From: Macrostomum lignano
Taxonomy: Eukaryota
Assembly (NCBI GenBank): GCA_002269645.1
Contig: NIVC01003413.1
Location: 1 to 64,000 of the forward strand
Reading direction: 5' to 3'
DNA length: 64,000 nt
The notes under the pieces were generated by a model. That model had not been told where the DNA came from. It saw nothing but the letters and a program-made list of their open reading frames with translations, and did not search any database. Position 1 is the stretch's first letter. The number at the start of each line of letters is the position of its first letter. Shown here piece after piece: positions 16,989-59,135 of the stretch. A program made the position numbers and the translations under genes.

Positions 16989-18593
16989 AATGAATCCGGA
17001 GAGTTAAGTTGTTTGACGGAAAGAAATCGATTAAGTCCAGTTTAGCGGAGACGATTTCAATGTTTTAATTTTGACGGAGAGGATTTCTGTTTCGTGGAGA
17101 GGATTTCGATGGTGTTCAGTTTTACGAAGAGAGGATTTCGATGATGTTCAGCTTCACGGAGAGGATTTCTGTTTTGCGGAGATAACTTATGATTGATTTC
17201 TGTTTTATGGAGACCATTTTGATGGATTTAAGTTTCAAGGAGAGGATTTCGAAGGAGTCCAGTTTCACTGAGATGATTTCGATGGTTTTCAGTTGCACGG
17301 ACAGGATTTCTGCTTCGCGGAGAGGATCTTGATGGATTTGGCATCTTCAATCAGTCAGAGAAGAGAGTAAAGAGAAGAATGAAAAGAGTAGAGAGATGAG
17401 ATGATAGAAAACAGAGTAGAAATGAATGGAGAGATTAGACATGACAGATGGGAGAGAAGAGGGGAGTAAGGCGGGAACGAAGGAGAGAGAAGAGAAGAGG
17501 AGAGAGGAGATGAGAGGGGAGATATGAGATAACAGAGGGAGATAAGAGAGATGATAGGAGAGAGAATAGATGAGGGATAAGAGCGTACAGAGGAAATAGA
17601 AGAGAGGGGAGAGTAGAGGAGAAAGAAAGAGTGAGATGAAGGATGAGAGATGAGAGAGGAGGGGAGAGAGAAGAGAGGAGAAAAGAGGGGAGAAAGGAGA
17701 CAGGAGAGAGTAGAGACGAAAGACCAGGGAGAAGATATAAATAAGGTAGTAGAGATGAGAGGAGAGAGAAGCGAAAGGAGAAGAGAGAGAGGAGAGAGAT
17801 GAAAGATCAGAGGAGAGAGTTAAGAGAGGAAAGTAGTGAAGAGAGGAGAGATGAGAGATGCGATGAGAAAAGAGATTAGTGATAACATAAGAGAGAAGAG
17901 ATTTGAGATTTGAGAAGAGAGGGGAGAAGATCAAAGGAGCAGGGAGAGGAGAAAAGAGAGAATGGAGAGGATAGAAAAGAGAGAAGAGAAGAGACAGGGG
18001 ATAGTGGAAATGAGGAAAGAAAGATGGGAGACAAGAAAGTAGAGTGTGAGAGCGTATATGAGATATGAGAAATGAGAGCAGAGAGGCGAGAAAAGAGAAG
18101 AGAGAGGGAGGGTTAAGAGAGACGATAGATAAGTGAGTAGAGATGAGATATGAGAGAGGAGAGAAAAGGGCAGAGATAAGAGAGAAGAGAGGAGACAGGA
18201 GACAGAAGTAAAAAGGAGAGTTATGAGAGAAGAGAGGAGACAAGAGACAGGAGAGGGTACAGACGAAAGACGAGGAGAAGATATAAATAAGGGAGTAGGG
18301 GTAGAGATGAGATGAGAGAGAGGAGAGAGAAGAGAGTCACGATAATAGCGAAGAGAGGAGAGAGGAGATATGAGAGACGTGAGAGTCTTTGATCTATGGT
18401 CTTTGAAAGGTTTTGTAAAGAATTTGTAGACGATTTAGACGATAGGGTTCAAGGCATGGAATTTCAGTTGATGGATGTTTCAGGGAATGGAATTCCGGTG
18501 ATGGGAGTTCTTCCCCTTTCTCCTCCGAAGGAGGAGTTCCACTCGTATTTCCATATTGGTTCGTCATAATTTCCACCTGTCCTGTCGGCTCAC

Positions 18594-21500
18594 CTCTTCC
18601 GAAGCGTTCTTGAGCTCTGCGTTCCCGCCGAACAGCGCCAGCATGTTGTCCTTGAAGTCCTCGGCAAAGATCGGCACGAAGCTGAGATTGCAGAAATCAG
18701 CTCGGCCCTTGCCAGCCGGGTAGTGCAGGTAGCTCGGCTCTGAGCTGTTGAGTCTCCAGCTGTTCCCGAACTCAAACAGCTGCCTCTCAGAGCTGCCAGC
18801 TGGCAGGACGCTGCCGTGTCTCAGTCTGAATCCGCTCGCATTGCTGTTGCCTAGCAACCCGTCCAGTCCGCTCGGGTATTTTCCTAACAAGTCCAGTTGA
18901 ACGCCGACTCTGAGCGAGCTAGTCTCCATGGTAACGGTGACGCTGACGCCGGTAGACTCGTCGACAATGTCGATGGTGCTGTTGTCGGGGACCTCCAGCC
19001 GGTAGCTGTCCAGTCTGGTCGCGTTGCTCAGCGCCGCCAGCTCGCCCCTGACGCTGCCGATCAGACGTCCGTCGCTGCTGAAGACGTCGAGGTCGTCGGA
19101 GCTTTCGTTGCGGATCACCGACACGGCCAGCTCGTTGAGGCCGGACTTCAGCGCGACGCCGACGAAGGCCGTGGCGGCTCCACCGCTGACTGGCGCGGTG
19201 CGCGCTTGCAGCCGCAGCATCGGTGAGTCCGGCCACCGCTCGCTGGTGAGCAGGTGGTACTCGCAGTGACCGTTGAATGTGTAGCTGCGGTTCGAGAGCG
19301 TGCTCAGATGGGGGTCGCCTCGGTTGAAGCCTGGAGATCGAGGTTGGTTGTTTGGTTTGGTGCTTAGTTGCTCAGGTTTTGGTTTTGGAGCTTATTTGCT
19401 TAGGTTTTGGTTCGATGCTTGGTTGCTTAGTTATTGGTTTACCTCCAGCAGGTGGCTGGTAGTCCTTGCTGGTGCACACGGGTCTTACGGCAGAATAAAC
19501 GGGCATCATTCCGGCCGCTGAGCAGACCCTTAAACCGTACAATTCATTTTTATACTGCTGAGATCCGAAACGAAATTGAACTCTATCAGTCGTCCTTTGC
19601 CGATAAAAGTACATTGCGTGTCCAGCACCGTCTGAGCTGCTGCTGATGAGGTGCCCAGCTGTAAATGATTATGTATTTTAACTCAATTAACTAAAACTAA
19701 ATATACGAGCGTATATTCAACTCTTCAATGCTCAGGTTCTGACTCACTGGTTGACATGCTGAACAGGATCCATTGCATGACAGTTCTCACAACCCAGAGG
19801 GGCTGACTTCTACGGCACAGCTGACTGATTTCGCTGCCAGCAGCTGCCGATGACATTTTGTAGCAGCACCTGGTCGACACCAGGTGACGGCAATTCTCAA
19901 GCTCGCATCTCAAGGAATTTTCCGGCTTACAACCGCTCGCACTGCTGCCTGTGAAGCTCCGAGCGCACTGGTAGCTGGTGTTACGGAAGCACATCCGGAT
20001 GCTGTCACCGGAGCACTCAAGCTTGTACGGACTGTACCGCCTGTCAAGGACTGCCGTGCGAAAATCGAAGGGACAGTCCGAGCAGCCTGGAAAGTCAGGG
20101 CTGCTCTTGTTGGCTCTGGCGGCTGCGATCCAACTGCCGCACTCAGGTGCACCCCTGTGCCCGATGCTGAGCTGCAGCACGTGACGCCCGGGTCTTCCCG
20201 AACTTCCGGGACTCAGGTTGGGCAGCTCGGGCCAGTCTGGGCTCAGGCTGAATGGCAGCCCTTTCCGAACGAATAAATTATCCGTGAATCCTGAGAATGC
20301 CATCAGGTTCAACGTTTGAGAGCTCCAGTTGAGGATTCTCGGCACAGGCAGGTGGAAGTCGCCGTAGTTGAAAATGGCGTATGAGTGAGTCTCGTTGCGT
20401 GTTACAACTGCTTGGAACTCGATGCTCTGAAATTGCATGCAGTAAGCAATTGTGCTCGAATGAGAAAGCATAAAAAAGCTGAAAAATGATTAAATCTAAC
20501 CTAGTGTTAGATTTCTGTGCAATTACATCGAGTAACCATAAAATCATAATAAGTTGCTTCGGGCGACCTTTTTTCTGTCTTTTATGGGATCTTCACGAAA
20601 TATATCAAATTCTAGTATGAGACGTCATAGCTTTTGCAAAGTATTAAAAAATGCATGCTAAAGAGTTGATTTTTTTCAGGAAAAATAACATTCTGGTTTT
20701 TCGTCTTCTTTTCCTTTTAAAGATACTTTAAATACAACATTGTTGTAAAAAGTGAAACTAAACTTAAAAAAACAGCTGCTTAGAGAATTTTGTTAAAAAT
20801 TACGTTATATATTTGCATCTTTGGGTCATTGCTAGCAAACAGAAGTGCAAATTATTTCCGTGGGAATGAGCTCCGTCAATTCGGAGAGATTTCCCCACTT
20901 ACAGCATTTGCCTTGGCTCGAGAACACAGGCCCAGGCAGAGGTCGAGCCAGCCGTTTTTCTCGTCCCAAGCTTGCCTAGAAGTGCAGTTCGAGACGCAGT
21001 CGAATCGGTTCCCATAAGGCAGTGACGGCGTCAGAATGCGCCAAGTCACGATGAGCGCCGTCAGAGGGTTGAACTTGGACCGAATCTCCTGCTCGATGAT
21101 CTGCTTGACCGCGCGCCAGTTCGAGCTAGAGCTATGGTTCCTCGAATTCAGCAGCTCGAAGGAAACCTTCGGAATCCAATCGCTTCCGTAGGTGGCAGGC
21201 TTAACGAACCAGTAAGGCGCAACGACGGCTCCAGGAAAGGTGACGTTGGCCGTGATGGAGTTGTATGGTAAATACCTCAGATACCCAGAGAAACTGATTG
21301 CGCCGTAGTTACTGATCTGGGTGTTGACATTTTTTTAAAATTATAAGCAGAGTTCAAAGAAAAATGAAGAAGTAGATTCTCCTTAATTTTGTCTTTCTAA
21401 GAATAGTTTTCTCCCAGCTCGTGAGCGCAACTGTCAATTCGAAGCTACAGTTCAACTATGTACGCAAAGTCATGTTGCGGAACTGGACTCACTTGAAAGG

Positions 21501-23006
21501 TCAAACTTTTCTGACTGCCAATCAGAAATGGAACGCCAAGTGGTGCGTGAATGATGTCATAGTCCGAGGTACTGGTTGCATTTACTGTCGATAGGAGCAT
21601 TTGAGCTGCAAAATGCATCCGGGATTGAGACAACTGGAGTGACTTCAGCCAAGTTATAATAACTGCAGCAGACTGTTGACACGTCAGTCAAAGTTTCATG
21701 CCCACAAACACTGACCCGAACTCAGTATGTGCTAGCCTAGCGCACATTAACTATGTGCTAGTTTATTTCTGTCTTATTGTTAAATGCTTTCTTTTTTAAC
21801 GAAAAAATATTTTTAGTGCCCACACAAATGGTTTTGCCACTATTGGAAGTTAAGATATGCATTAACCGTACCAAGCACTGACAATAAAAGTTTGACCTCT
21901 CGTTGCATCGTCAGATACAAATTCATCCGATTGGGACAGCATTCGCAGGCATCTCAGTCGAAGAGAATTTTTGTATCTGGGACATGGCCACAAGTGAATT
22001 AAATAAAAAGCTACTCAATCAAACGACATGTAGGAATAATGCATGCACTGCAGAGACTACTGACGAAATTGAGTTCGGTAGTGGATTTTCGCGCTGTTGC
22101 GAGCTGCAAGTTTTTTAATTAGCTTCTATGGCCACATAGGTGGTTAATGAGTGGCCCATCTGGTGTTTATACATGTATGATCTTTGGTACAAGCTTCAGC
22201 CATTCAGAACTTAAAAGGGACTACACCTTTTCACGTTCAATTTTGATCAAAGTCCAGTTCTAAAAAAACTAGCGGAAATTCAATTCAGACTGGGGATAAT
22301 TTTGTCTATGGCTAAACCTTGTTGCTTCGGTAGCAGAATGTTTTGAACTGGGGTTTGTTGCCCCAGTCTAAATTGAATTTCCGCAAGTTTTTTAGAACTG
22401 GACTTTGATCAAAATTGGACGTGAAAAGGTGTATTATTAAATTCAGACAGCCAATGAAATTCATGGGCTTCTAGATATATCCGGGGGAATATAAGCTGTA
22501 TATATCGGAGGGAATATCCCAATTTTTAGAAAGTCTTGGCCATAGACTCGCTTTAAGATGAGCGATCTTTTCTATTCCTTCATCCATGGTTCTACCTTGT
22601 AGTCAGTGAGTCTCTCTGTGATAAAAACCAATCCAAAAACCAAAGATGTCACATCAACTCACGATAGCAGACAGTCCCGTTGCCATAGTAACCCGGCTTG
22701 CAGATGCAATCAAATGAGCCGATCAGGTTGATGCAGTCGGCATTGGCATCGCACTTGGAGCTGCTGAGACACTCGTCAACGTCTTTATAATTTAGTTCAG
22801 TTTATGGCCAATAAAATACAGGCATAAATGTAGCTACAAGTATTCGCATTTTTAACAAGTGACCGAAATCAGAGGCTTTCACTTACCGGTGCAATTATCA
22901 GTTCCGTTGCCTTGAAACCCATCAAAGCAGGTGCAGTTGTACGACCCCGGCGTGTCGGTGCAAGTTGCGTAGAGACCGCAGGGCTTCGAATCGCATTTCT
23001 TCACGT
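18594..23006 (-). CDS. Module E (incomplete in window: ends after the VWD exon), 7 exons, 2,399 nt
   Basis: Exons: 22887-23006; 22663-22782; 21493-21605; 20903-21316; 19748-20426; 19443-19658; 18594-19330. The donor GTGAGC is intact at 18588-18593, and intron homology stops at about 18548. Confidence 0.8.
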
Positions 23007-26000
23007 CTGTAATGGTAGCAGCAGACACGCGTACGGAAATTATAACAAAATAAAGGAAAACAAGTAATCTATAGAATCTACAAAAAATTCCATCAGACCC
23101 ACACGAACACATATATTTTTTAATGTATATGGAAATGCTGTATGCTAGAATGTCTATAGATGCGATATCTACTGGTGTGGTAAATATATTTTCAGCTGCT
23201 GCCTTGACAGGCCCCGCCTTGAGGCAGATTTCAGCTAAGAGCTGTAAATTATATGTATGCTGTGTGTTATCCATAACATGGTGTCAGAGATGCAGTTAGA
23301 ACAGAACATGGTTCGTGTCAGACTGCTGCTGTTAGCAAATTTTACACGTAGTTGCACGGAGACAACAGCGAGGTGATGTTTGATTCGACTGGATTGCGAC
23401 CTCCAGGTCCCATGGTTTTCGACGACCTTTCACTCACTTTCATACAGTGAGAGCACATGGGCATACCATACTGAAGAGTGCTAAGACCTATCGTGAATGT
23501 GATTCAAGAAAGAGTGTTACATTCGAAGAGAAGCTGCATATCAATACTCATTTGGGTTCGCACATCCCTAGTAATGACATGCGACAGCCCTATATGACGC
23601 TCAGACGATTCATGGTCGTGTTGTTAAGCGTTAAACCGTGTTTTTGTTGTTGTTATCTGCTGCCTGAGCTGTGAGTACAACTGCATTCTCAAACTGTTGA
23701 GTATTTTACTATATGGAAAGGGGATGTTGCATGTATATGAATATGCTTTATGGAGAAGATACAGACGTAGCATAGAGTTGAGGGTGTAGTTCGGTCCTAG
23801 GAGTTTACGAAAAATACACTCTGCAAATCCAAATATACTAAATATTTGCTAAATTTCTCTTAAATTCCTGTGTTTGTGGCGATAAAATTACAACCAACAA
23901 ATTTATGCATAAAAAAGATAGGGGGATTTCTGAGGTGTAAGTACTTACCAACCGATAATCAGCTAAAGACAAAAATAATTTAGAATATAAATATTGGGGG
24001 TGTGAGAGTGAAGATCCCAACATTCTTCACCATATACCAGTTTTATCAAGGACAAAATCACTGCTCCATTCATTACTTCCTTCGTTTTATGTAGGGTAGG
24101 CCAAGTCAGAGCACAGGGTTTTACCTTCTGCCCCACACGGAACCTACGGAGAAGCAATGGTATGCAAATCGATCAATTGGCAAGAACAAATTGTCTGTCG
24201 CTGACATGTGCTCTGAAGTTGGAGTCCGCGCATTGGAGTCCGCATGTACAAACGGACCTCGGACATTCAAATCGGCAACTCATCGGCTTTTCTGGACTCC
24301 AAACTGCTACGCAATGTGAAAAAAAGACTCAGCAGACGAGTACGGTAGGCGTTAACTAAATTTTAACTTCCATAGCTGCTTTTTCATTATTAACAATTCA
24401 TTTTAGGTACGCCACATCGTGACTCCCTTATATTGTGACTGGAAAAAACTAAAGTGTTGTTGACTATGCATTGCCCTCGAATTCGTGTTTCTTCTTCATG
24501 CGTTTTTGGCTTTGAAAGTTTGTATCCTTTAAAAGAACATCGTGGGGATTTAACCTAGGATGCCTATGCGATGTCTATCGTAAATATACCTTTTCAAGCC
24601 CGAATGTGACAAAAGAAATCGAATGGCTATCTATCTGACCCAGACGAAAAAAGCATGCCGTACACAAGAATCTTAGAGACTGACCAATGAAGGCTCGTAA
24701 ACAGCTACAGAATTTTGCGACTTAAGAACTTACGGTTAAGCCGTTAAGACTAAGCGAATATAGCGGTGCCACATTTCGCTTACTTTACCACTTTTGGTTT
24801 TTGTATTTTGAAAGTACCACCTTCATGGAAGAAAGAATAGAATGGAGTGCTAATCTGAGCCAGTTATTTTTATCTCGTTCAATTTTCGCTTCTAACATCC
24901 CCTTCCCCCCGTTCTTTCCTATTGGCTCGTGACTGCCATAGACAAAGTATTTTTCGTCTCGTTTTTGTTTTCGTTCCCCTCTAAAAGGTATTTCCCAGCA
25001 TCGTACGAGCTCACAGCAAAATATGCTTTCAGCCAATAGGAAGGAACGGGGAAGGGATGTTAAAAGCGAAAATCGAGCGAGACAAAAATAACTGGCTCAG
25101 ATTAGCACTCCATTTTATTCCTCCCTCGATGACCACCTTACACAACTATTTTTAGATCTCTAAGCTCATATCCAAGCCATAGAAAAATTTGAAATTTGAA
25201 TTTGAAATTACTTTCGTCAAATTCGCGCCTGAAAAATATATACTGATAGCTAACGCCTTAAAGAGCCCCGAATTGTGAAAGAGATAAGCCAAGAGCTGCT
25301 AAATCTTTAACCCTGAGTAATAACTATAACGCAAACAAACATGAGACACTTAAGACACACACACACATCAGACCTACTAATAAGAATAATACGAGCTAAT
25401 AACTGATTACACCTGTCCAATGGGCAGATGTGCAACCGACAGCTCAGCCGCAGCTATTGCGCGACGCATCTGAAGGCTGCGCACGGCTGTTCAGTCCAAT
25501 GACTGGGGGGTCGCCACACCCACCCTCAATCACCCCAGCTAATTCTGGCACCCATTTTACAGCTAAGTGAACTGTAGCAATCCAGAGTTAAGCGTCTTGC
25601 TTAAGGACACAAATTGTTGCAGTGGGATCAGGAATCGAACATCCGACCTTCAAGTCGTGAATCCGACGCTCTAACCACTAGGCTACAACCCCTTTTGGCT
25701 ACAACCGCTTTTAGTAGGTGAGACCTACAAAAAACAAGTACACAAATGAGATCTAAGAGAACCCACATACAACCGAAAATAACACACGCATCAGACCCAC
25801 AAAAACACATACATAGGACACACAAGAACACAAATCAAACCCACAAGAAAACGAATCAGGCACACAAGAACACGAGAAAAATATATGAAAAATACTTTCA
25901 GGCTGCTGAACCTCACACAATTAAATACTTTACAGAACAGCTGCTCACCTTGCGGCTCCTGGCAGTCAGATGTCAGACAGGTTTTCACTGCCTGCTCGCA

Positions 26001-50000: not shown

Positions 50001-52646
50001 TGCCTCTAATAAAAAAGAACTAAGATATTTTCTTGGTCATTGCCAGCAAACGGAAGTGCAAATTATTTCCGTGGGAATGAGCTCTGTCACTTCGGAGAGA
50101 TTTCCCCACTCACAGCATTTGCCTTGTCTCGAGAACACAGGCCCAGGCAGAGGTCGAGCCAGCCGTTTTTCTCGTCCCAAGCTTGCCTAGAAGTGCAGTT
50201 CGAGACGCAGTCGAATCGGTTCCCATAAGGCAGTGACGGCGTCAGAATGCGCCAAGTCACGATGAGCGCCGTCAGAGGGTTGAACTTGGACCGAATCTCC
50301 TGCTCTATGATCTGCTTGACCGCGCGCCAGTTCGAGCTAGAGCTATGGTTCCTCGAATTCAGCAGCTCGAAGGAAACCTTCGGAGTCCAATATCTCCGGT
50401 AGTAGTTGGTGGCAGGCTTAACGAACCAGTAAGGCGCCACGACGGCTCCAGTAAAGTTGATCTTCGCCGAGGTGGAGTTGTATGGTAAATGCCTCAGGCG
50501 ATAACCAGAGAAACTGATTGCTCCGTATTGGCTAACCTAGGGTGTTAAGATTTTTTTATTTAAAGCACACAGAAAAAGTTAAAGGACAATTAAAAAGTTG
50601 ATTTGAGCGAAATCTCCATCAGCTCAGTAGAAATAACTGTCAATTCGAAGTTACAGTTCAACTTTGTACGCAAAGCCAGATGTTGCAGAGCAGGACTCAC
50701 TCGAAAAGACAAACTTTCCTGACTGCCAATCAGAAAAGGAGCACCACGTGGTGCGGAAATGGAGCGTCTGTCGCCGTACCAGATACGGGTGTACGAACTC
50801 ATTCGGTAGTACCGGATACGGGTTGCATTTACTGTCGATAGGATCATGTGAGCTGAAAAATGCATCCGGGATTGAGAAAACTCGAGTGACTTTAGCCAAA
50901 TATAAATACAAATATATCACGTCAACTCACGATAACAGACAGTCCCGTTGCCATAGTAACCCGGCTTGCAAATGCAATCAAATGAACCGATCAGGTTGAT
51001 GCAGTCGGCATGAGCATCGCATTTGGAGCTGCTGAGACACTCGTCAACGTCTTTAATTGGGTTCAGTTTATGGCCGTTCAAATACAAGCTCAAGTTTAGT
51101 TATAAGTAGCCGCATTTATTTAAAAGTTAGTAAAATAGAAGGTAGAGTAGCTCGCTTAATAAATAGGAATAAAATGAATGAGAGAACAAACATTAACTCG
51201 TTTTTTTACTTTAATTCAATTGCCAATGCATTTCGACCCTCGTAGGTCATCGTCAGGGCAGTAGTGAAATTGAAAATTCTAATAAACAGTTGAATAAATA
51301 TACCTGTGATAAGTTGAATACACAATATAAATTATTGTACGTAGTTTTCAATCGAAACAAGTTAACACACGGTGCAGTAGCGTACACTCAAAGCTAAAAC
51401 ACGCTGAGTATGTCCCAGTATGTCTGCAACTTGAAGTCTCGTGTCCCTCGGCCTCTCAATGCAGGTGTCGTTTATAAATTTCATTGCTCTGGCGACCAGA
51501 GTATTTCGTACATCGGAAAAACTAAGCCACACTTGTACACTAGGGTCAAGGAGCACTGGACCAAAAGATCTGCTGTACAGGAGCATCTTCTCACATGCAA
51601 CTCATGCTGTAACAACAAACCGATTGATTTATTTAAGATTATCGATTCTTGCCGCCATGAGCACACTTTGAATATCTTAGAGGCTATGTACATCAAAGAT
51701 CAGAACCCGAGCCTAAACTGCCAGCTAGCTATGGGGGGGTGCCAGCCGCCAACTCAGCGTGTTTTAGCTTGGAGTGTACGCTACTGCACCGTGTGTTAAC
51801 TTGTTTCGATTGAAAACTACGTAATAATTTATATTGTGTATTCAACTTATCACAGGTATATTTATTCAACTGTTTATTAGAATTTTCAATTTCACTACTG
51901 CCCTGACGATAACCTACAAGGGTCGAAATGCATTGGCAATTGAATAAAAGTAAAAAAACGAGTTAATGTTTGTTCTCTAATTAAAGTCGAAGGTTTTCAC
52001 TTACCGGTGCAATTATCTGTTCCGTTGCCTTGAAACCCATCGATGCAGGTGCAGTTGTACGACCCCGGCGTGTCGGTGCAGGTAGCGTACAGACCGCAAG
52101 GCTTCGAATCGCATTTGCTCACGTCTGCAATGGTAGGTCGTTACAGCAGATACGGATAACGAAATAAAGGAAAACGGGTGATCAATGGAATCAACAAAAC
52201 ATCACATCAACCTCACACTAGCACACACATCAGATCCACAACAAAACACATACACATCGGAAAAACAAGAATACACACATAAGACCCGCAAGCTCAAAAC
52301 ACAGATTAAAATGCAACCACCAGAAACAATAACACGAGAGGAAAGTTTACGGCAATAAATTTCAGATTGTGTGAATCTACTGCAATCCGGTAATCTACTG
52401 CGCAACTGCTCACCTTGCGGCTCCTGGCAGTCAGATATCAGACAGACATTCACTGACTGCTCGCATTGGGGTCCTGTAAATCCCAGATCGCACTTGCACT
52501 CTTCACGGTGATAGTAAGCTGCAATGGTGACGAGTGGGTGCGTGAGTGAGTGAGTGAGTGAGTGAGTGAGTGAGTGAGTGAGTAAGTGAGTGAGTGAGTG
52601 AGTCAGTCAGTCAGTCAGTCAGTCACCCACTCACTCCAGTCAGTCA

Positions 52647-52689
<43 letters not shown>

Positions 52690-52691
52690 TA

Positions 52692-52730
<39 letters not shown>

Positions 52731-52980
52731 CCCACTCACTCAAATCAGTCAGTCAGTCAGTCAGTCAGTCAGTCAGTCAGTCAGTCATCCACTCACTCAA
52801 ATCAGTCAGTCAGTCACCCACTCACTCAAGTCAGTCAGTCAGTCAGTCAGTCAGTCAGTCAGTCAGTCACCAACTCACTCAAGTCAGTCAGTCAGTCAGT
52901 CAGTCAGTCAGTCAGTCAGTCAGTCACCAACTCACTCAAGTCAGTCAGTCAGTCACCCACTCACTCCAGTCAGTCAGTCA

Positions 52981-53023
<43 letters not shown>

Positions 53024-53025
53024 TA

Positions 53026-53068
<43 letters not shown>

Positions 53069-53520
53069 CCCACTCACTCAAATCAGTCAGTCAGTCAGTC
53101 AGTCAGTCAGTCAGTCAGTCAGTCATCCACTCACTCAAATCAGTCAGTCAGTCACCCACTCACTCAAGTCAGTCAGTCAGTCAGTCAGTCAGTCAGTCAG
53201 TCAGTCAGTCACCCACTCACTCAAATCAGTCAGTCAGTCACCCACTCACACAAATCAGTCAGTCAGTCACCCACTCACTCAAGTCAGTCAGTCAGTCAGT
53301 CAGTCAGTCAGTCAGTCAGTCAGTCAGTCAGTCAGTCAGTCAGTCAGTCAGTCAGTCAGTCAGTCAGTCAGTCAGTCAGTCAGTCAGTCAGTCAGTCACC
53401 CACTCACTCAAATCAGTCAGTCAGTCACCCACTCACTCAAGTCAGTCAGTCAGTCAGTCAGTCAGTCAGTCAGTCAGTCAGTCAGTCAGTCAGTCAGTCA
53501 GTCAGTCAGTCAGTCAGTCA

Positions 53521-53554
<34 letters not shown>

Positions 53555-56500
53555 AAGTCAGTCAGTCAGTCACCCACTCACTCAAATCAGTCAGTCAGTC
53601 AGTCAGTCAGTCAGTCAGTCAGTCAGTCAGTCAGTCAGTCACCCACTCACTCAAATCAGTCAGTCAGTCAGTCAGTCAGTCAGTCAGTCAGTCAGTCAGT
53701 CACCCACTCACTCAAATCAGTCAGTCAGTCAGTCACCCACTCACTCCAGTCAGTCAGTCAGTCAGTCAGTCAGTCAGTCAGTCAGTCAGTCAGTCAGTCA
53801 GTCAGTCAGTCAGTCAGTCACCCACTCACTCAAGTCAGTCAGTCAGTCAGTCAGTCAGTCAGTCAGTCAGCTACTCACCCGTGTCGTCAGCCATGCCGCA
53901 GTCAGGGCAGCAGCGGCCCCTGCTCCCGCAGTCGCACACCACAATCCTGGGAGTCCACACCGTGACGGCTCCGACCTCGTCCACCGCCGCCAGCTGCAGT
54001 TTGATGTCGCCTCGCCAGTTGTCGACGGGCTGCCACACGAGCTGCCAGCTGCCGCTGGCTCCAGCCTCCAGCTTCGCGGTCCCCCCGACGGCCTCCAGCA
54101 CGGTGACATTCGGTGAGGCACCGTCGGGATCCGTCACGGAGAAGGTGACACTGACACTGTTGTTGCCGCTCACTCGCAGCTGGCTCGGGGCGCTCACGAA
54201 CTGCGGTGGTCGGTTGGCCAGGACGACACGGGTTCGAGTCTCGTCTCGAATGGCGACGGCCGCGTCTTGAGCGGCTGCGACCGAGCGAAGCTGAGCGGCG
54301 TCGAACATGCAGGTGAGGTCGGAGGAGCCGGAGCTGCGGCACACCTGCCAGGGCGGAGCGGCAGCGGCATGGGTTTCCATGCGCAAAATGTTTTTCTCGA
54401 AATGCATAGTAGGTCTTTACTGGCAATTTTCTCACCAAGAATCCGGTAGTGACGTTAGCAACAACTTTTTAATTTTTTCGAGCTCGTACATTAAATAACT
54501 GATTACACCTGTTCTGATAAGCAGATGTGCAACCGACAGCTGCGCCGCAGCTATCGGGGGGAGCATCTGAAAGCTGCGTACGGCTGTTCAGTCAAAGTAC
54601 TGCGGGCTCACCAAACTCACCCTATACTATCGCAGCTAATGCTGATTGTCATTTTAGAGCAGGTTTAACTGAAGAAATGTAGAGTTAAGTGTCTTGTTCG
54701 AGGACACTAATGGTTCCAGTGAGATCGGGAATCCAACGGTCAACCTTCATGTCGAGAGCTACAACCCCTTATAGATTAATGAGTGGATCCAGGGTGGCCA
54801 ACCATTTTTTGATCAGGGGTACATCAGAAATTTATACCACAACGAGCGAGGTATCAGCGCAATTTTACCACCACAGGTCAACATTTTCATTTCGCTTGAA
54901 AATAGGATCATGACCGTATCTCAGGAAATTTTTCTCTTAAGTGTCCGATGACCCAATAAATTCACACCAGGACTCATGCATCGTAAAAATTTCTGCTTTT
55001 TCCCGAATACTGTAGTTCCACATTAGCACTTCTTAACTTCAACCTGCCTGTCCGCTCACCTCTTCCGAAGCGTTCTTGAGCTCCGCGTTCCCGCCGAACA
55101 GCGCCAGCATGTTGTCCTTGAAGTCCTCAGCAAAGGTCGGCACGAAGCTGAGATTGCAGAAATCAGCTCGGCCCTTGCCAGCCGGGTAGTGCAGATAGCT
55201 CGGCTCTGAGCTCTTGATTCTCCAGCTGTTCCCGAACTCAAACAGCTGCTTCTCGGAGCTGCCAGCTTTTAGGGCGCCACCGTATCCCAGTCTGAATCGG
55301 TATGCGTACCTGTTGCCTAGCAACCCGTCCAGTCCGCTCGCGCATTTTCCTGTCAAGTCCAGTTGAACGCCGACTCTGAGCGAGCTCGTCTCCATGGTAA
55401 CGGTAACGCTGACGCCGGCAGATTCGTCGACAATGTCGATAGTGCTGTTGTCAGGGACCTCCAGCCGGTAGCTGTCCAGTCTGGTCGCGTTGCTCAGCGC
55501 CGCCAGCTCGCCCCTGACGCTGCCGATCCGACGTCCGTCGCTGCTGAAGACGTCGAGGTCGTCGGAGCTTTCGTTGCGGATCACCGACACGGCCAGCTCG
55601 TTGAGGCCGGACTTCAGCGCGACGCCGACGAAGGCCGTGGCGCCTCCACCGCTGACTGGCGCGGTGCGCGCTTGCAGCTGCACCCTCGGTAAGCGCCAGC
55701 AAAATATGTTGTAGAGCAGGTGGTACTCGCAATGACCGTTGAATGTGTAGCTGCGGTTCGAGAGCGTGCTCAGGTGAGGGTCGCCTCGGATGAAGCCTGG
55801 ATATCGGACGTTGGTGTTTGGTTTGATGCTTATAAGTGACCTAAAGTATTTGAGCTTTAATTACTTTATGAAATACTCAAAATATGGGTGCTTAGAGCTA
55901 CAGTTACAGCAAATCAGTTACCTCCAACAGGTGGCTGGTAGTTCTTGCTGGTGCACACGGGTCTTACGGCAGAATAAGCGGCCATCATTCCGGCCGCTGA
56001 GCAGACTCTTAGGCCGTACAACTCATTTTGATACTGCTGAGACCGGAGGCCAAATCGAACTCGATCAGTCGTCATTTGCCGATAAAAGTAAATTGCGTGT
56101 CCGGCGCCGTCTGAGCTGCTGCTGATGAGGTGACCAGCTACAAATGATTGTTTTTTTTAATTCAGTGGACTAACACTTGGTAAATATTTTACCGTATTTT
56201 ACATTTTACATTTATATTTAAATACATTTTACCATGTTATTCAAACTTTCACGGTCAAGTTGTGACTCACTGGATGACATGTTGAACATGATCTGTCGCA
56301 TGGCAGCTCTCACTTTCCAGACGGCATCACTTCTACGGCACAGCTGACTGATTTCGCTGCCAGCAGCTGCCAACGACATTCTGTAGCAGCAACTGGTCGA
56401 CACCAGCTGACTGCACTTTTGAAGCCGGCAGGCCAAGGAATAAGAAGGTCTACATCTGCTGTACCTGAACCTTTGTGCGCACAGGTAGCTGGTGTTGCGA

Positions 56501-58732
56501 AAGCACATCCTGATGCTGTCACCGGAGCACTCAAACTCGTATGGACTGTACCGCTTGTCAAGGACTGCCGTGCGAAGATCGAAGGGACAGTCGGAGCAGC
56601 CTGGAAAGACAGAGCGGCTCTGGTTGGCTCTGGCGGCTGCGATCCAACTGCCGCACTCAGATAAAACCCTCTTCCCAAAGCTCAGCACGTGACGTCCGGG
56701 TCTTCCCGAACTTCCGGGACTCAGGTTGGGCAGCTCGGGCCAGTCGGGGCGCAGGCTGAATGGCAGCTCTTTCCGAACGAAAACATTATCCGTGAATCCT
56801 GAGAATGCCATCAGGTTCAACGTTGGATGGCTCCAGTTGAGGATTCTCGGCACAGGCAGGTGAAAGTCGCCGTAGTTGAAAATGGCGTATGAGTGAGTCT
56901 CGTTGCGCGTTACAACTGCTTGGAACTCGATGCTCTGAAATTGCATGCAGTAAGCAATTGTGCTCGATTGAGAAAGAGCTGAAAAGCTTGATTTGCGGTC
57001 AGCTCTTCAAAGACGAAAAAAGTGTAAATTCGTGATGTTTTTTCGTTCGGACTGCGTTTTATCAATTACCAAAGCATGGCAATTCTTAGCACTCCCATGC
57101 ATGGGCAGATCTTAATGAAAGAAATAAAATGCAGGCGTGACACGCTTTGCTTCGAATTTGGCTTCGCTATGAAATATTCGTAACTATTGAAGCTAAATCT
57201 TTGGGATCTTATTAGTGACGCAAAATTCTAAAGTAGATGTACAGCTGTGCAACAAGAATATTTTGCGTCCATTGATACAGGTTTAACATTTGAGCTGCAA
57301 GAATCCTAGCAGATGCGCTACAAACTCTTAATGCTGTTTCAGCCTTAGCTACTAACTACGATATTTTCTGGGTCATCGCCAGAAACCCCCCTGCCTCTAA
57401 TAAAAAAGAACTAAGATATTTTCTGGGTCATTGCCAGCAAACAGAAGTGCAAAATATTTCTCTGGGAATGAGCTGTGTCACCTCGGAGAGATTTCCCCAC
57501 TTACAGCATTTGCCTTGGCTCGAGAACACAGGCCCAGGCAGAGGTCGAGCCAGCCGTTTTTCTCGTCCCAAGCTTGCCTAGAAGTGCAGTTCGAGACGCA
57601 GTCGAATCGGTTCCCATAAGGCAGTGACGGCGTCAGAATGCGCCAAGTCACGATGAGCGCCGTCAGAGGGTTGAACTTGGACCGAATCTCCTGCTGGATA
57701 ATCTGCTTGACCGCGCGCCAGTTCGACCTGGTGCTGTGGTTCCTCGAATTCAGCAGCTCGTAGGAAACCTTCGGAATCCAATATCTTCTGTAGTAGTTGG
57801 TGACAGGCTTAACGAACCAGTAAGGCGCCACGACGGCTCCAGTAAAGTTGATCTTCGCCGAGGTGGAGTTGTATGGTAAATACCCCAGGCGATAACCAGA
57901 GAAACTGATGGCGCCGTAGTTTGTGAGCTAGGGTGTTGATGATTCTTTATTATTAAGTACACACAAAAAGTACAAGCACAATTATCGTTATCATGTTTCA
58001 AGACATCCTAAAGTAAAGATATAAAGATCTATACTTTAAGATATAAAGATATTAAGTAAAGATATTTAAAGAATTTTTTTTTAAATGTAGTTGATTTGAG
58101 CCGATTTCCTCTCATCTCAGAAGAAAAAGTCGTCAATTTGAAGTTACCGTTTAACTCTGTATGCAAAGTAGGATGTTGCAAAGCAGGACTTACTCGACAA
58201 GACAAACTTTCCTGGCTGGCAATCAGAAACGGAGCGCCACGTGGAGCGGAAATGGTGCTACTGTACCATCCACTCGCACTGGTTGCATTTACTGTCGATA
58301 GGAGCATTTGAGCTGAAAAATGCATCCGGGATTGAGAAAACTCGAGTGACTTTAGCCAACTATAAATACAAATATATCACGTCAACTCACGATAACAGAC
58401 AGTCCCGTTGCCATAGTAACCCGGCTTGCAGATACAATCAAATGAGCCGATCAGGTTTATGCAGTCGGCATGAGCATCGCATTTGGAGCTGCTGAGACAC
58501 TCGTCAACGTCTGTAATTGGGTTCAGTTGATGGCCAAACAAATGCAAGCACAAGTTTAGTTATAAGTAGCCGCATTTAGTTAAAGTTATTAAAGTCGAAG
58601 GTTTTCACTTACCGGTGCATTTATCAGTTCCGTTGCCTTGAAACCCATCGATGCAGGTGCAGTTGTACGACCCCGGCGTGTCGGTGCAGGTAGCGTACAG
58701 ACCACAAGGCTTCGAATCGCATTTGCTCACGT
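18594..58732 (-). CDS. Giant multi-exon extracellular MUC4/SUSD2/mesh-like glycoprotein: 5 tandem EGF-EGF-NIDO-AMOP-VWD-cadherin-like-EGF modules (43 exons, ~4,810 aa; 5' and 3' ends not in window)
   Basis: Exons defined by GT(A/G)AG-type donors and YAG-type acceptors. Homologous introns have identical phases, and no stop codon was seen in the exons read. Motifs: cbEGF consensus CxD/NxxxxY/FxC, NIDO-like YGAISF...VAPYW, AMOP-like CPFD...CCY, VWD GDPHLSTL...YTFNGHCEY...GLLGN...FGNSW, NRPPQF...VTDPDG cadherin/Ig-like fold. Whether this is one transcript or several paralogs is not decidable from sequence alone. Confidence 0.8.
22222..22433. mobile_element. Foldback MITE, ~74-bp TIRs, TA ends (Tc1/mariner-like)
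   Basis: tacaccttttcacgttcaattttgatcaaagtccagttctaaaaaaac...gactgggg pairs with ccccagtc...ttttttagaactggactttgatcaaaattggacgtgaaaaggtgta. It lies inside a ~1 kb expansion unique to module E's EGF2 intron. Confidence 0.8.
23200..23290 (+). mobile_element. Possible LTR 3' end plus primer-binding site of a decayed Gypsy-like element
   Basis: ...ccataaca followed by tggtgtcagaga at 23279 resembles an LTR-CA/TGG PBS junction. No paired LTR or pol motifs were recognised. Confidence 0.3.
24824..25131. mobile_element. 308-bp MITE with ~100-bp imperfect TIRs and 8-bp TSD (P- or hAT-superfamily type)
   Basis: TSD accacctt at 24816-24823 and 25132-25139. Ends read CATGG... and ...CGATG. The arm aatggagtgctaatctgagccagttattttt...attggct is mirrored by agccaat...aaaaataactggctcagattagcactccatt. 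Confidence 0.85.
25395..25692 (-). mobile_element. tRNA-derived SINE with CORE-like central domain
   Basis: Minus strand starts ggggttgtagcctagtggttagagcgtcgg (A box), then gttcgattcc (B box), then tgtgtccttaagcaagacgcttaac...taaaatgggtgcc (CORE-like). A related copy lies at 54492-54770. Confidence 0.75.
25949..33171 (-). CDS. Module D, 9 exons, 2,997 nt / 999 aa
   Basis: Exons: 33052-33171; 32830-32949; 32606-32751; 32014-32436; 28008-28677; 27688-27903; 26872-27608; 26261-26720; 25949-26053. Confidence 0.85.
26090..26252. repeat. (TCAG)n microsatellite in the cadherin-EGF intron of module D
   Basis: tcag repeats with cactcactcaag interruptions. Confidence 0.95.
29880..31340 (+). mobile_element. 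Decayed Ty3/Gypsy integrase region (interrupted by the LINE at 30131-30609)
   Basis: SDQGRVF at ~30751 and YHTQTNGQTERLNQ...NWDRHLDAIQLAYN (ORF 30793-31185). A VKSCNRC zinc-binding-like fragment lies at ~29970. Confidence 0.7.
30131..30609 (+). mobile_element. 5'-truncated non-LTR retrotransposon 3' end with 12-bp TSD
   Basis: TSD gactatatgttg at 30119-30130 and 30610-30621. It encodes the C-terminal zinc motif LSGHG...CPFC...ENAEHFICHC and is the same family as 44170-46633. Confidence 0.85.
33524..38699 (-). CDS. Module C, 9 exons, 3,054 nt / 1,018 aa
   Basis: Exons: 38580-38699; 38358-38477; 38134-38279; 37542-37964; 36208-36928; 35913-36128; 34800-35536; 33896-34361; 33524-33628. Confidence 0.85.
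33645..33888. repeat. (TCAG)n microsatellite in the cadherin-EGF intron of module C
   Basis: Direct reading; includes a duplicated exon end at 33821-33840. Confidence 0.95.
35557..35800. repeat. 27-bp minisatellite (~9 copies) in the linker-VWD intron of module C
   Basis: Unit tttggtttgatgcttagttgctcaggt. Confidence 0.9.
38759..40830 (+). mobile_element. Internally deleted Ty3/Gypsy LTR retrotransposon (gag, zinc knuckles, protease, RT fragment)
   Basis: PBS-like tggcagcg at ~38951. Two CCHC knuckles (CHSCCKPGHIARWC, CSRCSGKGHTAAVC), protease LLDTGAQVSL, and RT C-terminal IIVFSRTLDKHLVRLERVFQQLRDAGLKL...LGFYRRFI. Similar LTR-end sequence appears at ~38900 and ~40790. Stops and frameshifts are present. 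Confidence 0.85.
41015..52124 (-). CDS. Module B, 9 exons, 3,012 nt / 1,004 aa
   Basis: Exons: 52005-52124; 50931-51050; 50701-50852; 50114-50536; 48441-49113; 48123-48338; 47107-47843; 42967-43432; 41015-41119. Confidence 0.85.
41140..42958. repeat. ~1.8 kb (TCAG)n array with interspersed cacccactcactcaa motif, module B
   Basis: Direct reading. Confidence 0.95.
44170..46633 (+). mobile_element. Decayed RNase H-bearing non-LTR retrotransposon (I/R1/Loa-like group)
   Basis: APE end SEHRFIRF; RT-like FLDIEWAINNV, KGVPRAG, DDVTAI, YTSIIRPSISYASLVW; RNase H CYTDGS, EVLAI, HSDSQAAL; C-terminal zinc motif; (AAGTC)-type tandem tail. Many frameshifts. Confidence 0.85.
46739..47070. mobile_element. 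332-bp hAT-like MITE with 8-bp TSD
   Basis: TSD ggctcatc at 46731-46738 and 47071-47078. TIRs caggcgcgttgcca / tggcgacgcccctg. Confidence 0.85.
47864..48012. repeat. 27-bp minisatellite (~5 copies) in the linker-VWD intron of module B
   Basis: Same unit as 35557-35800. Confidence 0.9.
49658..50016 (+). mobile_element. tRNA-derived SINE (second family) with 13-bp TSD
   Basis: ggggccgtagccgagcggt (A box), ggctcgattcc (B-box variant), aataaaaaa tail. TSD aacta(c/a)gatattt at 49645-49657 and 50018-50030. Empty site in module C. Confidence 0.8.
51221..51260 (-). ncRNA. Minimal type I hammerhead ribozyme motif (intact core)
   Basis: Minus strand UGCC-CUGACGA-U-GACC-uacgag-GGUC-GAAA-UGCAUU-GGCA: stem I UGCC/GGCA, stem II GACC/GGUC, palindromic stem III AUGCAU, AUU cleavage triplet. 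Confidence 0.8.
51410..51740 (+). pseudogene. GIY-YIG endonuclease domain fragment of Penelope-like element
   Basis: VVYKFHC...YIGKT..HL.TRVKEH...SAV.EHL...ILEAMYIKDQNPSLN is the PLE-type GIY-YIG signature. Confidence 0.85.
51899..51938 (+). ncRNA. Minimal type I hammerhead ribozyme motif (stem II first pair mutated)
   Basis: UGCC-CUGACGA-U-AACC-uacaag-GGUC-GAAA-UGCAUU-GGCA. Confidence 0.7.
52414..58732 (-). CDS. Module A (first in transcription order), 9 exons, 2,970 nt / 990 aa
   Basis: Exons: cbEGF 58613-58732; cbEGF 58391-58510; variable 58194-58312; NIDO-a 57505-57927; NIDO-b/AMOP 56271-56934; linker 55922-56137; VWD 55060-55796; cadherin-like 53879-54344; EGF 52414-52518. Confidence 0.85.
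52540..53870. repeat. ~1.3 kb (TGAG)n/(TCAG)n array with cacccactcactcaa motif, module A
   Basis: Direct reading. Confidence 0.95.
54492..54770 (-). mobile_element. Degenerate copy of the CORE-like SINE at 25395-25692
   Basis: Shared aataactgattacacctgt...cagatgtgcaaccgacagct...gagttaag.gtcttg...ggacac...gctacaacccc; tRNA head partly deleted. Confidence 0.7.
57384..57407 (+). mobile_element. 3' remnant of the SINE found full length at 49658-50016
   Basis: aacccccctgcctctaataaaaaa followed by gaactaagatatttt, with duplicated flanking intron sequence. Confidence 0.7.
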
Positions 58733-59086: not shown

Positions 59087-59135
59087 CTTGCGGCTCCTGA
59101 CAGTCAGTTGTCAGAAAGACTTTCACTGACTGCTC
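59087..59135 (-). pseudogene. Truncated 3' half of the module-terminal EGF exon (edge of the module array)
   Basis: EQSVKVFLTTDCQEPQ plus intact GTGAGC donor. The 5' half (YYHREECKCDLGFTGPQC) is missing, one Cys is changed to Phe, and an in-frame TGA lies just upstream. Confidence 0.75.

What the first reader, a model, noticed from the sequence alone, without database searches (positions are those of the whole stretch)
18594..58732. A ~4,800-aa, five-fold tandem NIDO-AMOP-VWD polyprotein hidden in 43 phase-matched exons
Seen: the nine-exon cassette (120, 120, 113-152, 414/423, 664-721, 216, 737, 460/466, 105 nt) repeats A to E. Intron phases are 1,1,0,0,1,1,0,1,1 in every copy, all length changes are multiples of 3, and no stop was seen. 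The last EGF exon of one module joins in phase to the first EGF exon of the next, with no start, signal-peptide, stop or TM exon between modules. Established: MUC4, SUSD2, mesh and coral mucin-like proteins usually carry a single NIDO-AMOP-VWD set. Inference: this is one giant extracellular matrix, mucus or adhesion protein built by whole-cassette duplication; I do not recall this architecture being described.
Basis: partly seen in the sequence, partly recalled or inferred. Interest (0 to 1): 0.85.

Follow-up and report, generated by a model that had tools for sequence, protein, structure and literature searches.

The report
Five-cassette MUC4-like flatworm gene array
The minus strand carries five head-to-tail copies of a nine-exon cassette for an adhesion or mucin-type surface protein of the flatworm Macrostomum lignano; all 43 exons stay in one reading frame and show selection, but the array has no start or end exon in the window, so one giant protein is likely and unproven.

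Summary
All are AG/GT-bounded, the intron phases are as stated, and the exons join into 14,432 nt (4,810 codons) with no stop.

This is not chance. About 23 stops would be expected under neutral drift. All 11 exon indels are multiples of 3, against 20 of 85 in introns. dN/dS is 0.44-0.64 overall and 0.06-0.23 in the junction EGF exons.

The window is Macrostomum lignano, a flatworm, not a coral. Each cassette reads EGF, cbEGF, NIDO, a Cys-rich region, VWD starting with GDPH, an Ig-like region, then EGF. Pfam confirms NIDO and VWD. It does not detect AMOP, so that label stays unproven.

Complete paralogous genes elsewhere in the genome have a signal-peptide exon and a 49-aa hydrophobic tail exon. 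Neither occurs anywhere in the window.

The array is cut at both ends. A truncated e9 lies at 59135-59088, next to transposon-like ORFs. Module E stops after e7, next to satellite DNA.

Serial splicing into one long mRNA is the most economical reading. An RNA-seq-derived paralog model already joins 1.6 cassettes. No transcript data for this locus were available.

Verdict: new variant of a known kind, moderate interest.

The parts
58613..58732 (-). module A e1 EGF-like (120 nt)
   Evidence: AG/GT-bounded, open in frame; Pfam EGF_3
58391..58510 (-). module A e2 Ca-binding EGF (120 nt)
   Evidence: Pfam EGF_CA/EGF_3
58194..58312 (-). module A e3 NIDO start (119 nt)
57505..57927 (-). module A e4 NIDO middle (423 nt)
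   Evidence: Pfam NIDO
56271..56934 (-). module A e5 NIDO end + Cys-rich AMOP-like (664 nt)
   Evidence: Pfam NIDO
55922..56137 (-). module A e6 AMOP-like end (216 nt)
55060..55796 (-). module A e7 VWD, starts with GDPH (737 nt)
   Evidence: Pfam VWD; GDPH
53879..54344 (-). module A e8 C8-like + Ig-like (466 nt)
   Evidence: weak Big_9/Cadherin_5
52414..52518 (-). module A e9 EGF-like (105 nt)
52005..52124 (-). module B e1 (120 nt)
50931..51050 (-). module B e2 (120 nt)
50701..50852 (-). module B e3 (152 nt)
50114..50536 (-). module B e4 (423 nt)
48441..49113 (-). module B e5 (673 nt)
48123..48338 (-). module B e6 (216 nt)
47107..47843 (-). module B e7 VWD/GDPH (737 nt)
42967..43432 (-). module B e8 (466 nt)
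41015..41119 (-). module B e9 (105 nt)
38580..38699 (-). module C e1 (120 nt)
   Evidence: Pfam on spliced module C
38358..38477 (-). module C e2 (120 nt)
38134..38279 (-). module C e3 (146 nt)
37542..37964 (-). module C e4 (423 nt)
36208..36928 (-). module C e5 (721 nt)
35913..36128 (-). module C e6 (216 nt)
34800..35536 (-). module C e7 VWD/GDPH (737 nt)
33896..34361 (-). module C e8 (466 nt)
33524..33628 (-). module C e9 (105 nt)
33052..33171 (-). module D e1 (120 nt)
32830..32949 (-). module D e2 (120 nt)
32606..32751 (-). module D e3 (146 nt)
32014..32436 (-). module D e4 (423 nt)
28008..28677 (-). module D e5 (670 nt)
27688..27903 (-). module D e6 (216 nt)
26872..27608 (-). module D e7 VWD/GDPH (737 nt)
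26261..26720 (-). module D e8 (460 nt)
25949..26053 (-). module D e9 (105 nt)
22887..23006 (-). module E e1 (120 nt)
22663..22782 (-). module E e2 (120 nt)
21493..21605 (-). module E e3 (113 nt)
   Evidence: 100% match to UniProt A0A1I8J495
20903..21316 (-). module E e4 (414 nt)
19748..20426 (-). module E e5 (679 nt)
19443..19658 (-). module E e6 (216 nt)
18594..19330 (-). module E e7 VWD/GDPH (737 nt), the last homologous exon. Module homology ends at 18545, 48 nt into intron 7.
59088..59135 (-). Truncated copy of the last 48 nt of e9, followed by an intact GTGAGC donor and the intron leading to module A e1. One Cys is changed to Phe, and an in-frame TGA lies 3 codons upstream. This marks the upstream limit of the array.

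Best explanation
This is a real array of five head-to-tail cassettes in the Macrostomum lignano genome, and selection has kept it open. The cassettes arose by tandem duplication of the internal part of a MUC4-type surface-glycoprotein gene. The duplicated unit runs from just upstream of e1 to about 80 nt past e9, stopping just before the family's tail exon.

The introns that flanked this unit in the ancestral gene are phase 1: signal-peptide exon to e1, and e9 to tail exon. Each added copy is therefore automatically in frame. The most likely expression mode is serial splicing, e9 of one cassette to e1 of the next. That would produce the internal >=4,810 aa of a very long secreted or surface-attached glycoprotein. 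Its signal-peptide exon and its terminal exon are not in the array and probably lie outside the window.

Each cassette encodes two EGF domains, NIDO, a Cys-rich AMOP-like region, a VWD that opens with the GDPH self-cleavage motif, an Ig-like region and one EGF. The product would be a multivalent, heavily N-glycosylated adhesion or barrier protein. It could self-cleave at up to five GDPH sites, as MUC4 and FCGBP do.

Shown: exons, frames, domains, selection, and the absence of internal start or stop exons. Inferred: the single transcript, cleavage and function.
For: - All 43 exons have AG/GT boundaries and join into 4,810 codons with no stop.
- About 23 stops would be expected if neutral. The expected share per module is 3-6, so each module is individually depleted.
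- All 11 exon indels are multiples of 3, against 20 of 85 in introns.
- Pairwise dN/dS is 0.44-0.64.
- The junction EGF exons e1, e2 and e9 have dN/dS of 0.12, 0.06 and 0.23 at dS about 0.2. Every copy of e1 is therefore translated, yet e1 has no ATG or signal peptide. The A-to-B and C-to-D gaps are only 289 and 352 nt, and their indels do not keep frame (0 of 5).
- Complete paralogous genes (L001, two genes; L003) each have a signal-peptide exon with a phase-1 donor and a 49-aa tail exon with a phase-1 acceptor 82 nt after e9. These exons are 82-100% conserved among paralogs but absent from the window.
- PAA75777.1 (P0001) joins a partial cassette (e1-e6) to a full one by a canonical phase-1 splice. 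That GenBank annotation is RNA-seq-derived (PMC5730564).
- Pfam finds NIDO at 1.7e-7, VWD at 2.7e-6 and the EGFs. GDPH is present in 5 of 5 cassettes, with 22-28 N-glycosylation sequons per cassette.
- A distant transcript-derived relative, P0131, has NIDO, the same Cys-rich region, GDPH-VWD, an Ig-like region, EGFs and a TM helix.
Against: - There is no start or signal-peptide exon and no terminal exon in the window. The upstream limit is a broken e9 next to transposon-like ORFs. Module E stops after e7 and abuts 18 kb of satellite or low-complexity DNA.
- No database protein spans an e9-to-e1 junction.
- No GenBank (RNA-seq-based) model matches cassettes A-E at >=90% identity. That annotation did, however, drop transcripts overlapping repeats.
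- Lineage-specific pN/pS is about 1 for module C, and for A and E it is not significantly below 1.
- Low dS in e4, e7 and e8 points to gene conversion, which can keep frames open without selection.
Confidence: 0.55

Rival explanations
1. Orphaned array. The five cassettes are a young segmental-duplication product, cut off from the gene's signal-peptide and tail exons by rearrangement, transposon and satellite insertion. The array is no longer, or never was, a functional gene. Its frames are still open because the copies are young and are patched by gene conversion from functional paralogs.
For: - Both ends are truncated: mid-e9 at 59135, with an upstream in-frame stop and a Cys-to-Phe change, and 48 nt into intron 7 of module E.
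- There is no start or tail exon in the window.
- No RNA-seq-derived GenBank model matches the array.
- Module C has pN/pS about 1.
- e4, e7 and e8 have dS of 0.05-0.08 and are 94-96% identical to distant loci, a signature of gene conversion.
Against: - There are no stops where about 23 are expected, and each module is individually depleted.
- 11 of 11 exon indels keep the frame.
- e1, e2 and e9 have accumulated synonymous divergence (dS about 0.2) but almost no replacements (dN 0.013-0.049). Conversion cannot explain this.
- All 86 splice dinucleotides are intact.
Confidence: 0.2
2. Alternative cassette use. One leader exon and one terminal exon are combined with one or a few of the cassettes per transcript. 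All cassette boundaries are phase 1, so any subset is in frame. The result would be a set of ~1000-2000 aa isoforms with variable NIDO and Cys-rich regions and a near-constant VWD and Ig-like part.
For: - The cassette boundaries are symmetric and phase 1.
- e3, e5 and e6 diverge fast (dN/dS 0.6-0.8), while e7 and e8 are homogenised.
- The P0001 model uses the signal-peptide exon of the upstream gene at L001 10001 and so passes over that gene's whole cassette at L001 20669-25976. A second, identical signal-peptide exon at 34345 means this is probably an annotation artefact.
Against: There is no direct evidence. No conserved intronic selector or docking elements were looked for or seen. The paralog P0001 shows serial inclusion across its e6-to-e1 junction.
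Confidence: 0.12
3. Assembly artefact. Copies from different homeologous or duplicated regions of the redundant M. lignano genome were stitched head to tail by the assembler.
For: The M. lignano assembly is highly redundant and repeat-rich (PMC5730564). The window has satellite DNA at one end.
Against: - The cassettes differ by 8-19% in exons.
- They carry private insertions: a 3.7 kb insertion in B intron 7, 3.3 kb in D intron 4, and an LTR-retrotransposon fragment in the B-to-C gap.
- Their microsatellite lengths differ.
- The inter-cassette junctions are continuous homologous intron sequence, not assembly breaks.
Confidence: 0.05
4. Five separate tandem genes, each expressed on its own.
For: Tandem complete genes of this family exist elsewhere: L001 holds two, each with its own signal-peptide and tail exons.
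Against: - Here no cassette has a signal-peptide, leader EGF or tail exon.
- Two of the gaps are only 289 and 352 nt.
- The first in-frame Met is inside e3 and is not followed by a hydrophobic signal.
- Read-through tails after e9 are not frame-conserved.
Confidence: 0.05

Closest known systems
Macrostomum lignano paralogs PAA75777.1 / PAA75776.1 (BOX15_Mlig030817g1 / Mlig028699g1; 1711 / 1514 aa)
   Same: The same cassette at 80% identity, with the same exon phases. The model already contains a partial cassette (e1-e6) spliced in frame to a full cassette, in an RNA-seq-derived annotation.
   Different: Only 1.6 cassettes. The gene has a signal-peptide exon, an extra EGF exon and a 49-aa hydrophobic tail exon, all missing from the window.
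Macrostomum lignano single-cassette genes PAA78299.1 (BOX15_Mlig002447g2, 1069 aa) and the L003 gene (A0A1I8J489 / BOX15_Mlig014470g1)
   Same: The cassette runs EGF, cbEGF, NIDO, Cys-rich region, GDPH-VWD, Ig-like region, EGF, at 71-85% identity.
   Different: One cassette per gene, flanked by a signal peptide and a hydrophobic C-terminal tail (GPI- or TM-like).
MUC4 and the NIDO-AMOP-VWD group (SUSD2, Drosophila Mesh, cnidarian or mollusc 'mucin-like protein')
   Same: NIDO is followed by a Cys-rich region and then a VWD that begins with GDPH, the site where MUC4 is thought to self-cleave (PMC8660890). EGF domains follow the VWD. Columns are shared with an octopus 'mucin-like protein' and with the MUC4-type C8-3 motif.
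   Different: Known members carry one NIDO-AMOP-VWD set (PMC9080433). There is no PTS mucin repeat here. Pfam does not detect AMOP. An Ig-like region follows the VWD. The set is repeated five times.
FCGBP (IgGFc-binding protein; PDB 8rde, 8r0t)
   Same: A very long secreted protein built of tandem VWD-containing cassettes, many starting with GDPH (seen in the alignments). That these sites self-cleave is from my own knowledge. FCGBP is a model for how a multi-GDPH chain could behave.
   Different: Its cassettes are VWD-C8-TIL, with no NIDO, EGF or Ig-like parts. The sequence relationship is limited to the VWD.

Membership tests
MUC4-type NIDO-AMOP-VWD proteins | NIDO domain (PF06119) | tested here: met
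   Spliced module C scores E=1.7e-7 and 31.9 bits against a cut-off of 25. The module A exon pieces also hit. The other modules align over their full length.
MUC4-type NIDO-AMOP-VWD proteins | AMOP domain (PF03782) between NIDO and VWD | tested here: inconclusive
   Tests that found nothing: Pfam at E<=10 on the ~230-aa region of modules A and C or on paralogs; a profile search of 1.84e9 proteins, which found only 5 relatives, none annotated AMOP; PDB, no hit. The AF2 model was too poor to use (pLDDT 45.8). In favour: the region sits in the right position, and it shares conserved C..W, C.CP, CCY and RP.C columns with an octopus 'mucin-like protein' and a Dimorphilus protein. That this pattern resembles AMOP is from memory only.
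MUC4-type NIDO-AMOP-VWD proteins | VWD domain (PF00094) | tested here: met
   E=2.7e-6 and 28.2 bits against a cut-off of 22.9. The module A e7 piece scores 1.1e-5.
MUC4-type NIDO-AMOP-VWD proteins | GDPH motif at the start of the VWD, and cleavage there | tested here: met
   The motif is present once in each of the five cassettes, at the first residues of e7. Whether it is cleaved cannot be tested with these tools.
MUC4-type NIDO-AMOP-VWD proteins | Signal peptide and membrane anchor (TM or GPI-type tail) | tested here: not met
   tblastn with the signal-peptide, leader EGF and tail exons of four paralogs finds nothing in the window. The same queries find these exons at 82-100% identity in L001 and L003. 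They may lie outside the window.
MUC4-type NIDO-AMOP-VWD proteins | Pro/Thr/Ser-rich mucin tandem-repeat domain (needed to call it a mucin) | tested here: not met
   S+T+P is 21-23% in every cassette, and there is no PTS-repeat exon.
Macrostomum lignano EGF-NIDO-VWD gene family | High identity over the whole cassette, with shared exon phases | tested here: met
   71-83% identity over 92-100% of the cassette. UniProt A0A1I8J495 matches module E at 100%. The same phase-1 junctions occur in L001.
FCGBP-type multi-VWD proteins | Repeated VWD-C8-TIL units | tested here: not met
   Only the VWD is shared. Pfam finds no C8 or TIL domain. This is a functional analogy only.

The most novel reading that the evidence does not exclude
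The array is a bank of alternative cassettes. One leader exon and one tail exon are spliced to one or a few of at least five phase-compatible cassettes. This would give a repertoire of surface proteins with variable NIDO and Cys-rich faces on a constant VWD/Ig-like stem that gene conversion keeps uniform. It would be a cassette-scale analogue of mutually exclusive exon arrays.
Probability: 0.08. Interest if true: 0.7.

Novelty: new variant of a known kind. Interest (0 to 1): 0.4.

Why it matters
If the five cassettes are spliced in series, this would be the largest tandem repeat of a MUC4-type NIDO / Cys-rich / VWD unit that I could find in the databases searched. It would also be one of the largest extracellular proteins of a model flatworm, and it is currently represented only by fragmentary and chimeric gene models.

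Five GDPH sites in one chain would make it a natural test case for how self-cleaving VWD modules build multi-subunit surface or mucus structures.

The locus also shows cleanly how phase-1 symmetric boundaries let a whole multi-exon cassette multiply in frame. It may matter for work on Macrostomum epidermis, gut or adhesion. If the array is orphaned, it is instead a well-dated example of how a duplicated gene segment decays while gene conversion patches it.

Tried and rejected
- AMOP: I tried Pfam at E<=10, a PDB profile search, a HMMER profile search of 1.84e9 representatives, a word-index search seeded with the octopus AMOP-like region (no candidates) and a PDB search with that region (VWD hits only). 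None linked the Cys-rich region to an annotated AMOP.
- Structure: AlphaFold2 of module E (P0006) with an 11-sequence alignment gave pLDDT 45.8, so no fold search was run.
- Finding the source contig and its flanks: exact look-ups of P0006, P0132 and the ORF at 60190-60801 were not on record. L001 and L003 are paralogous loci, not this one, with at most 96% identity.
- P0132 looked like a spliced cDNA of module C. It reads through the e7 donor and is riddled with frame shifts, so I read it as a gene prediction on error-rich sequence, not as expression evidence.
- A scan for an ATG plus hydrophobic exon with a phase-1 donor upstream of module A gave only chance-level candidates, for example 62906-62786, with no similarity to the family's signal peptides.
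- Read-through tails after e9 are hydrophobic, but their frame is not conserved, so I rejected them as anchors.
- Consecutive UniProt accessions hint that a signal-peptide-bearing, A-like cassette (A0A1I8J4L5, 89.7% identical to A) might lie upstream of the window. I could not confirm this.
- Literature searches for the paralog gene names and for NIDO in Macrostomum found nothing relevant.
Full report
**1. The observation**

The feature lies on the minus strand. A self-comparison shows that the ~6.5 kb stretch 52001-58900 recurs four more times downstream, at 75-95% DNA identity and with introns included. I mapped the nine exons of the first copy onto the others and kept only AG/GT-bounded, frame-open solutions. 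This gave 43 exons:

| Module | Coordinates | Exons |
|---|---|---|
| A | 58732-52414 | 9 |
| B | 52124-41015 | 9 |
| C | 38699-33524 | 9 |
| D | 33171-25949 | 9 |
| E | 23006-18594 | 7 |

Joined, the exons give 14,432 nt (4,810 codons) without a stop.

**2. More than chance: selection**

- The five copies differ from their consensus at 634 nucleotides. Placing that many substitutions at random gives about 23 stop codons on average and never zero in 2000 trials. By its share of differences, each module would be expected to carry 3-6 stops.
- All 11 indel events in exons are multiples of three, against 20 of 85 in introns (Fisher P about 1e-6).
- Exons are more conserved than introns: 81-97.5% against 64-91%.
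- Pairwise dN/dS is 0.44-0.64.
- By exon, the three EGF exons that form the cassette junctions are the most constrained. e1 is 0.12, e2 is 0.06 and e9 is 0.23, at dS about 0.2. e3, e5 and e6 are relaxed, at 0.6-0.8.
- e4, e7 and e8 have much lower dS (0.05-0.08) and are 94-96% identical even to copies at other loci. That points to gene conversion.
- Lineage-specific changes show clear constraint in B and D (pN/pS 0.33 and 0.22), a weaker and non-significant signal in A and E (about 0.65), and none in C (1.07).

**3. Organism and domains**

The nearest proteins are all from the flatworm Macrostomum lignano. UniProt A0A1I8J495 (P0006) is 100% identical to module E exons 3-7 plus a short read-through of the e7 donor. 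A0A1I8J499 (P0008) is a chimera of A e5-e6, B e1 and B e7. The window is therefore M. lignano, and the locus is currently annotated only as fragments.

Pfam on a spliced cassette finds two EGF domains (EGF_3/EGF_CA), NIDO (1.7e-7) and VWD (2.7e-6), plus a weak Ig-like signal in e8. Every VWD exon begins with ...GF(N/I)RGDPH. GDPH is the site at which MUC4 is thought to self-cleave (PMC8660890). Each cassette has 22-28 N-glycosylation sequons and 45-47 cysteines (32 in the truncated module E), and no Pro/Thr/Ser-rich mucin domain.

**4. The AMOP label**

The ~230-aa Cys-rich region between NIDO and VWD is where AMOP sits in MUC4-type proteins. Pfam does not report AMOP at E<=10 for this region, for the paralogs, or for the octopus and Dimorphilus relatives. 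A profile of the region searched against 1.84 billion representative proteins found only five relatives. The PDB has none. An AlphaFold2 model was too poor to use.

The region does share conserved cysteine, tryptophan and proline columns with an octopus 'mucin-like protein' and a Dimorphilus protein that also carry NIDO and the MUC4-type C8-3 motif. I therefore call it AMOP-like by position and pattern, but unproven.

**5. What complete family members look like**

Locus L001 (GenBank NIVC01000862.1) holds two complete genes. Each has:
- a 28-aa signal-peptide exon ending in a phase-1 donor;
- an extra EGF exon;
- one cassette, or 1.6 cassettes;
- a 49-aa tail exon with a hydrophobic C-terminus, entered by a phase-1 acceptor 82 nt after e9.

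L003 holds a single-cassette gene with the same ends. A distant transcript-derived relative, P0131 from a Logan RNA assembly, has NIDO, the same Cys-rich region, GDPH-VWD, an Ig-like region, about six EGFs and a transmembrane helix. The family is therefore a set of membrane-tethered, MUC4-like surface glycoproteins.

In the 1.6-cassette gene (PAA75777.1) the partial cassette's e6 is spliced in phase 1 to the next cassette's e1 through canonical sites. That GenBank annotation was built from RNA-seq (PMC5730564). In-frame fusion of duplicated cassettes is thus already seen in this family.

**6. What the window lacks**

The signal-peptide, leader EGF and tail exons are 82-100% conserved among paralogs and easy to find in L001 and L003. 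None is present anywhere in the window. The A-to-B and C-to-D gaps are only 289 and 352 nt, and their indels do not preserve a frame. The B-to-C and D-to-E gaps are 2.3 and 2.9 kb; B-to-C holds a retrotransposon protease fragment on the other strand.

In the window, the sequence after e9 is homologous to the paralog's intron 9 up to the point where the tail exon would begin, and it diverges there. The duplicated unit therefore excludes the tail exon.

The array is also cut at both ends:
- Upstream of module A there is only the last 48 nt of an e9, with a Cys-to-Phe change and an in-frame stop just before it. Unrelated sequence follows, with a THAP-domain ORF and other ORFs on the plus strand.
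- Module E's homology stops 48 nt into intron 7. It gives way to CT-rich low-complexity sequence and 18 kb of satellite-like repeats.

**7. Interpretation**

The constraint on every copy of e1 and e2 means these exons are translated. They have no initiator or signal peptide of their own, so they must be reached by splicing from an upstream coding exon in phase 1. The nearest such exon is e9 of the preceding cassette.

Serial splicing into one long mRNA is therefore the most economical reading (confidence about 0.55). The leader and terminal exons would lie outside the window. In the paralog L001, the 5' exons lie 4 to about 19 kb upstream of the first cassette exon.

The rivals, in order of weight:
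- The array is a recently orphaned, non-functional segment whose frames are kept open partly by gene conversion (0.2). The broken ends, module C's neutral pattern and the lack of any RNA-derived model favour this. The stop-codon deficit, the frame-preserving indels and the low dN at appreciable dS in the EGF exons argue against it.
- Cassettes are used alternatively rather than all together (0.12).
- The array is an assembly artefact (0.05). Private insertions and 8-19% divergence between copies argue against it.
- There are five separate genes (0.05). The absence of start and tail exons argues against it.

**8. Comparison and novelty**

Known NIDO-AMOP-VWD proteins are described with one such set (PMC9080433). 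The closest precedent is the 1.6-cassette paralog in the same genome. FCGBP is a functional analogue: a long chain of VWD cassettes, many opening with GDPH (that they self-cleave is my own knowledge).

A five-fold repeat of the whole EGF, NIDO, Cys-rich, VWD, Ig, EGF unit is a new variant of a known kind. It is interesting but lineage-specific, and it still lacks expression evidence. Split-read mapping of existing RNA-seq across the four cassette junctions would settle the main question.

Noticed in passing
window 1-18400: G-rich (plus strand, GC skew up to 0.74) low-complexity and satellite-like DNA. It includes ~30-nt units (TTCAGTTTCACGGAGAGGATTTCGATGGTG; arrays at 5954-6231 and 11312-11778) and an ~11 kb internal duplication (3798-4066 resembles 14863-15131). 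The long minus-strand ORFs here are Ser/Leu-rich artefacts with no Pfam hits.
   Followed up: partly
window 52545-53870, 41142-42958, 33667-33887, 26088-26252: Intron 8 of modules A-D carries an (AGTC)n-type microsatellite with very different copy numbers: about 326, 448, 55 and 41. This accounts for most of the intron-length differences.
   Followed up: partly
window 35558-35803 and 47865-48012: A 27-nt minisatellite lies in intron 6, just upstream of the VWD exon. It has 9.1 copies in module C and 5.4 in module B. It reads as KPEQLSIK repeats in a frame that does not continue into e7.
   Followed up: partly
window 39569-40204 (+): An ORF with a retroviral-type aspartyl protease domain (Asp_protease_2, 1e-5) lies in the 2.3 kb gap between modules B and C, on the opposite strand. 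It is a fragment of an LTR retrotransposon.
   Followed up: partly
window 30151-30608 and 46193-46629: The same repeat (91-95% identical) is inserted in module D intron 4 and in module B intron 7. These are non-homologous introns, so the insertions are independent and post-date the cassette duplication.
   Followed up: no
window 59664-63829 (+): A cluster of plus-strand ORFs lies upstream of the array. One has a THAP zinc-finger domain (62592-62858, 3.9e-8). The others (59664-61085, 62865-63829) have no Pfam hit. This is probably transposon-derived sequence abutting the broken e9.
   Followed up: partly
window exons e4, e7, e8 of all modules; L001 and L003: Synonymous divergence is mosaic: dS is 0.05-0.08 in e4, e7 and e8, against about 0.2 in the other exons. 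The VWD/e8 region, with adjacent intron, is 94-96% identical even to paralogs on other contigs. This suggests ongoing gene conversion across the family.
   Followed up: partly
L001 10001-62162 (GenBank NIVC01000862.1): The annotated 52 kb gene for PAA75777.1 appears to borrow the signal-peptide exon of the upstream tandem gene. An identical signal-peptide exon lies at 34345-34428, and a complete first gene (signal-peptide exon, EGF exon, cassette, tail) lies at 10001-26205. The locus is probably two genes.
   Followed up: partly
UniProt A0A1I8J4L5 (P0121) and A0A1I8J4A5 (P0005): Two further module-A-like cassettes exist in M. lignano. They are 89.7% and 91% identical to A and 97% identical to each other, and both models end at the same point in e8. 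One carries a signal peptide spliced directly to e1. Their accessions are consecutive with the two models from this window, so they might lie just upstream. I could not confirm this.
   Followed up: partly
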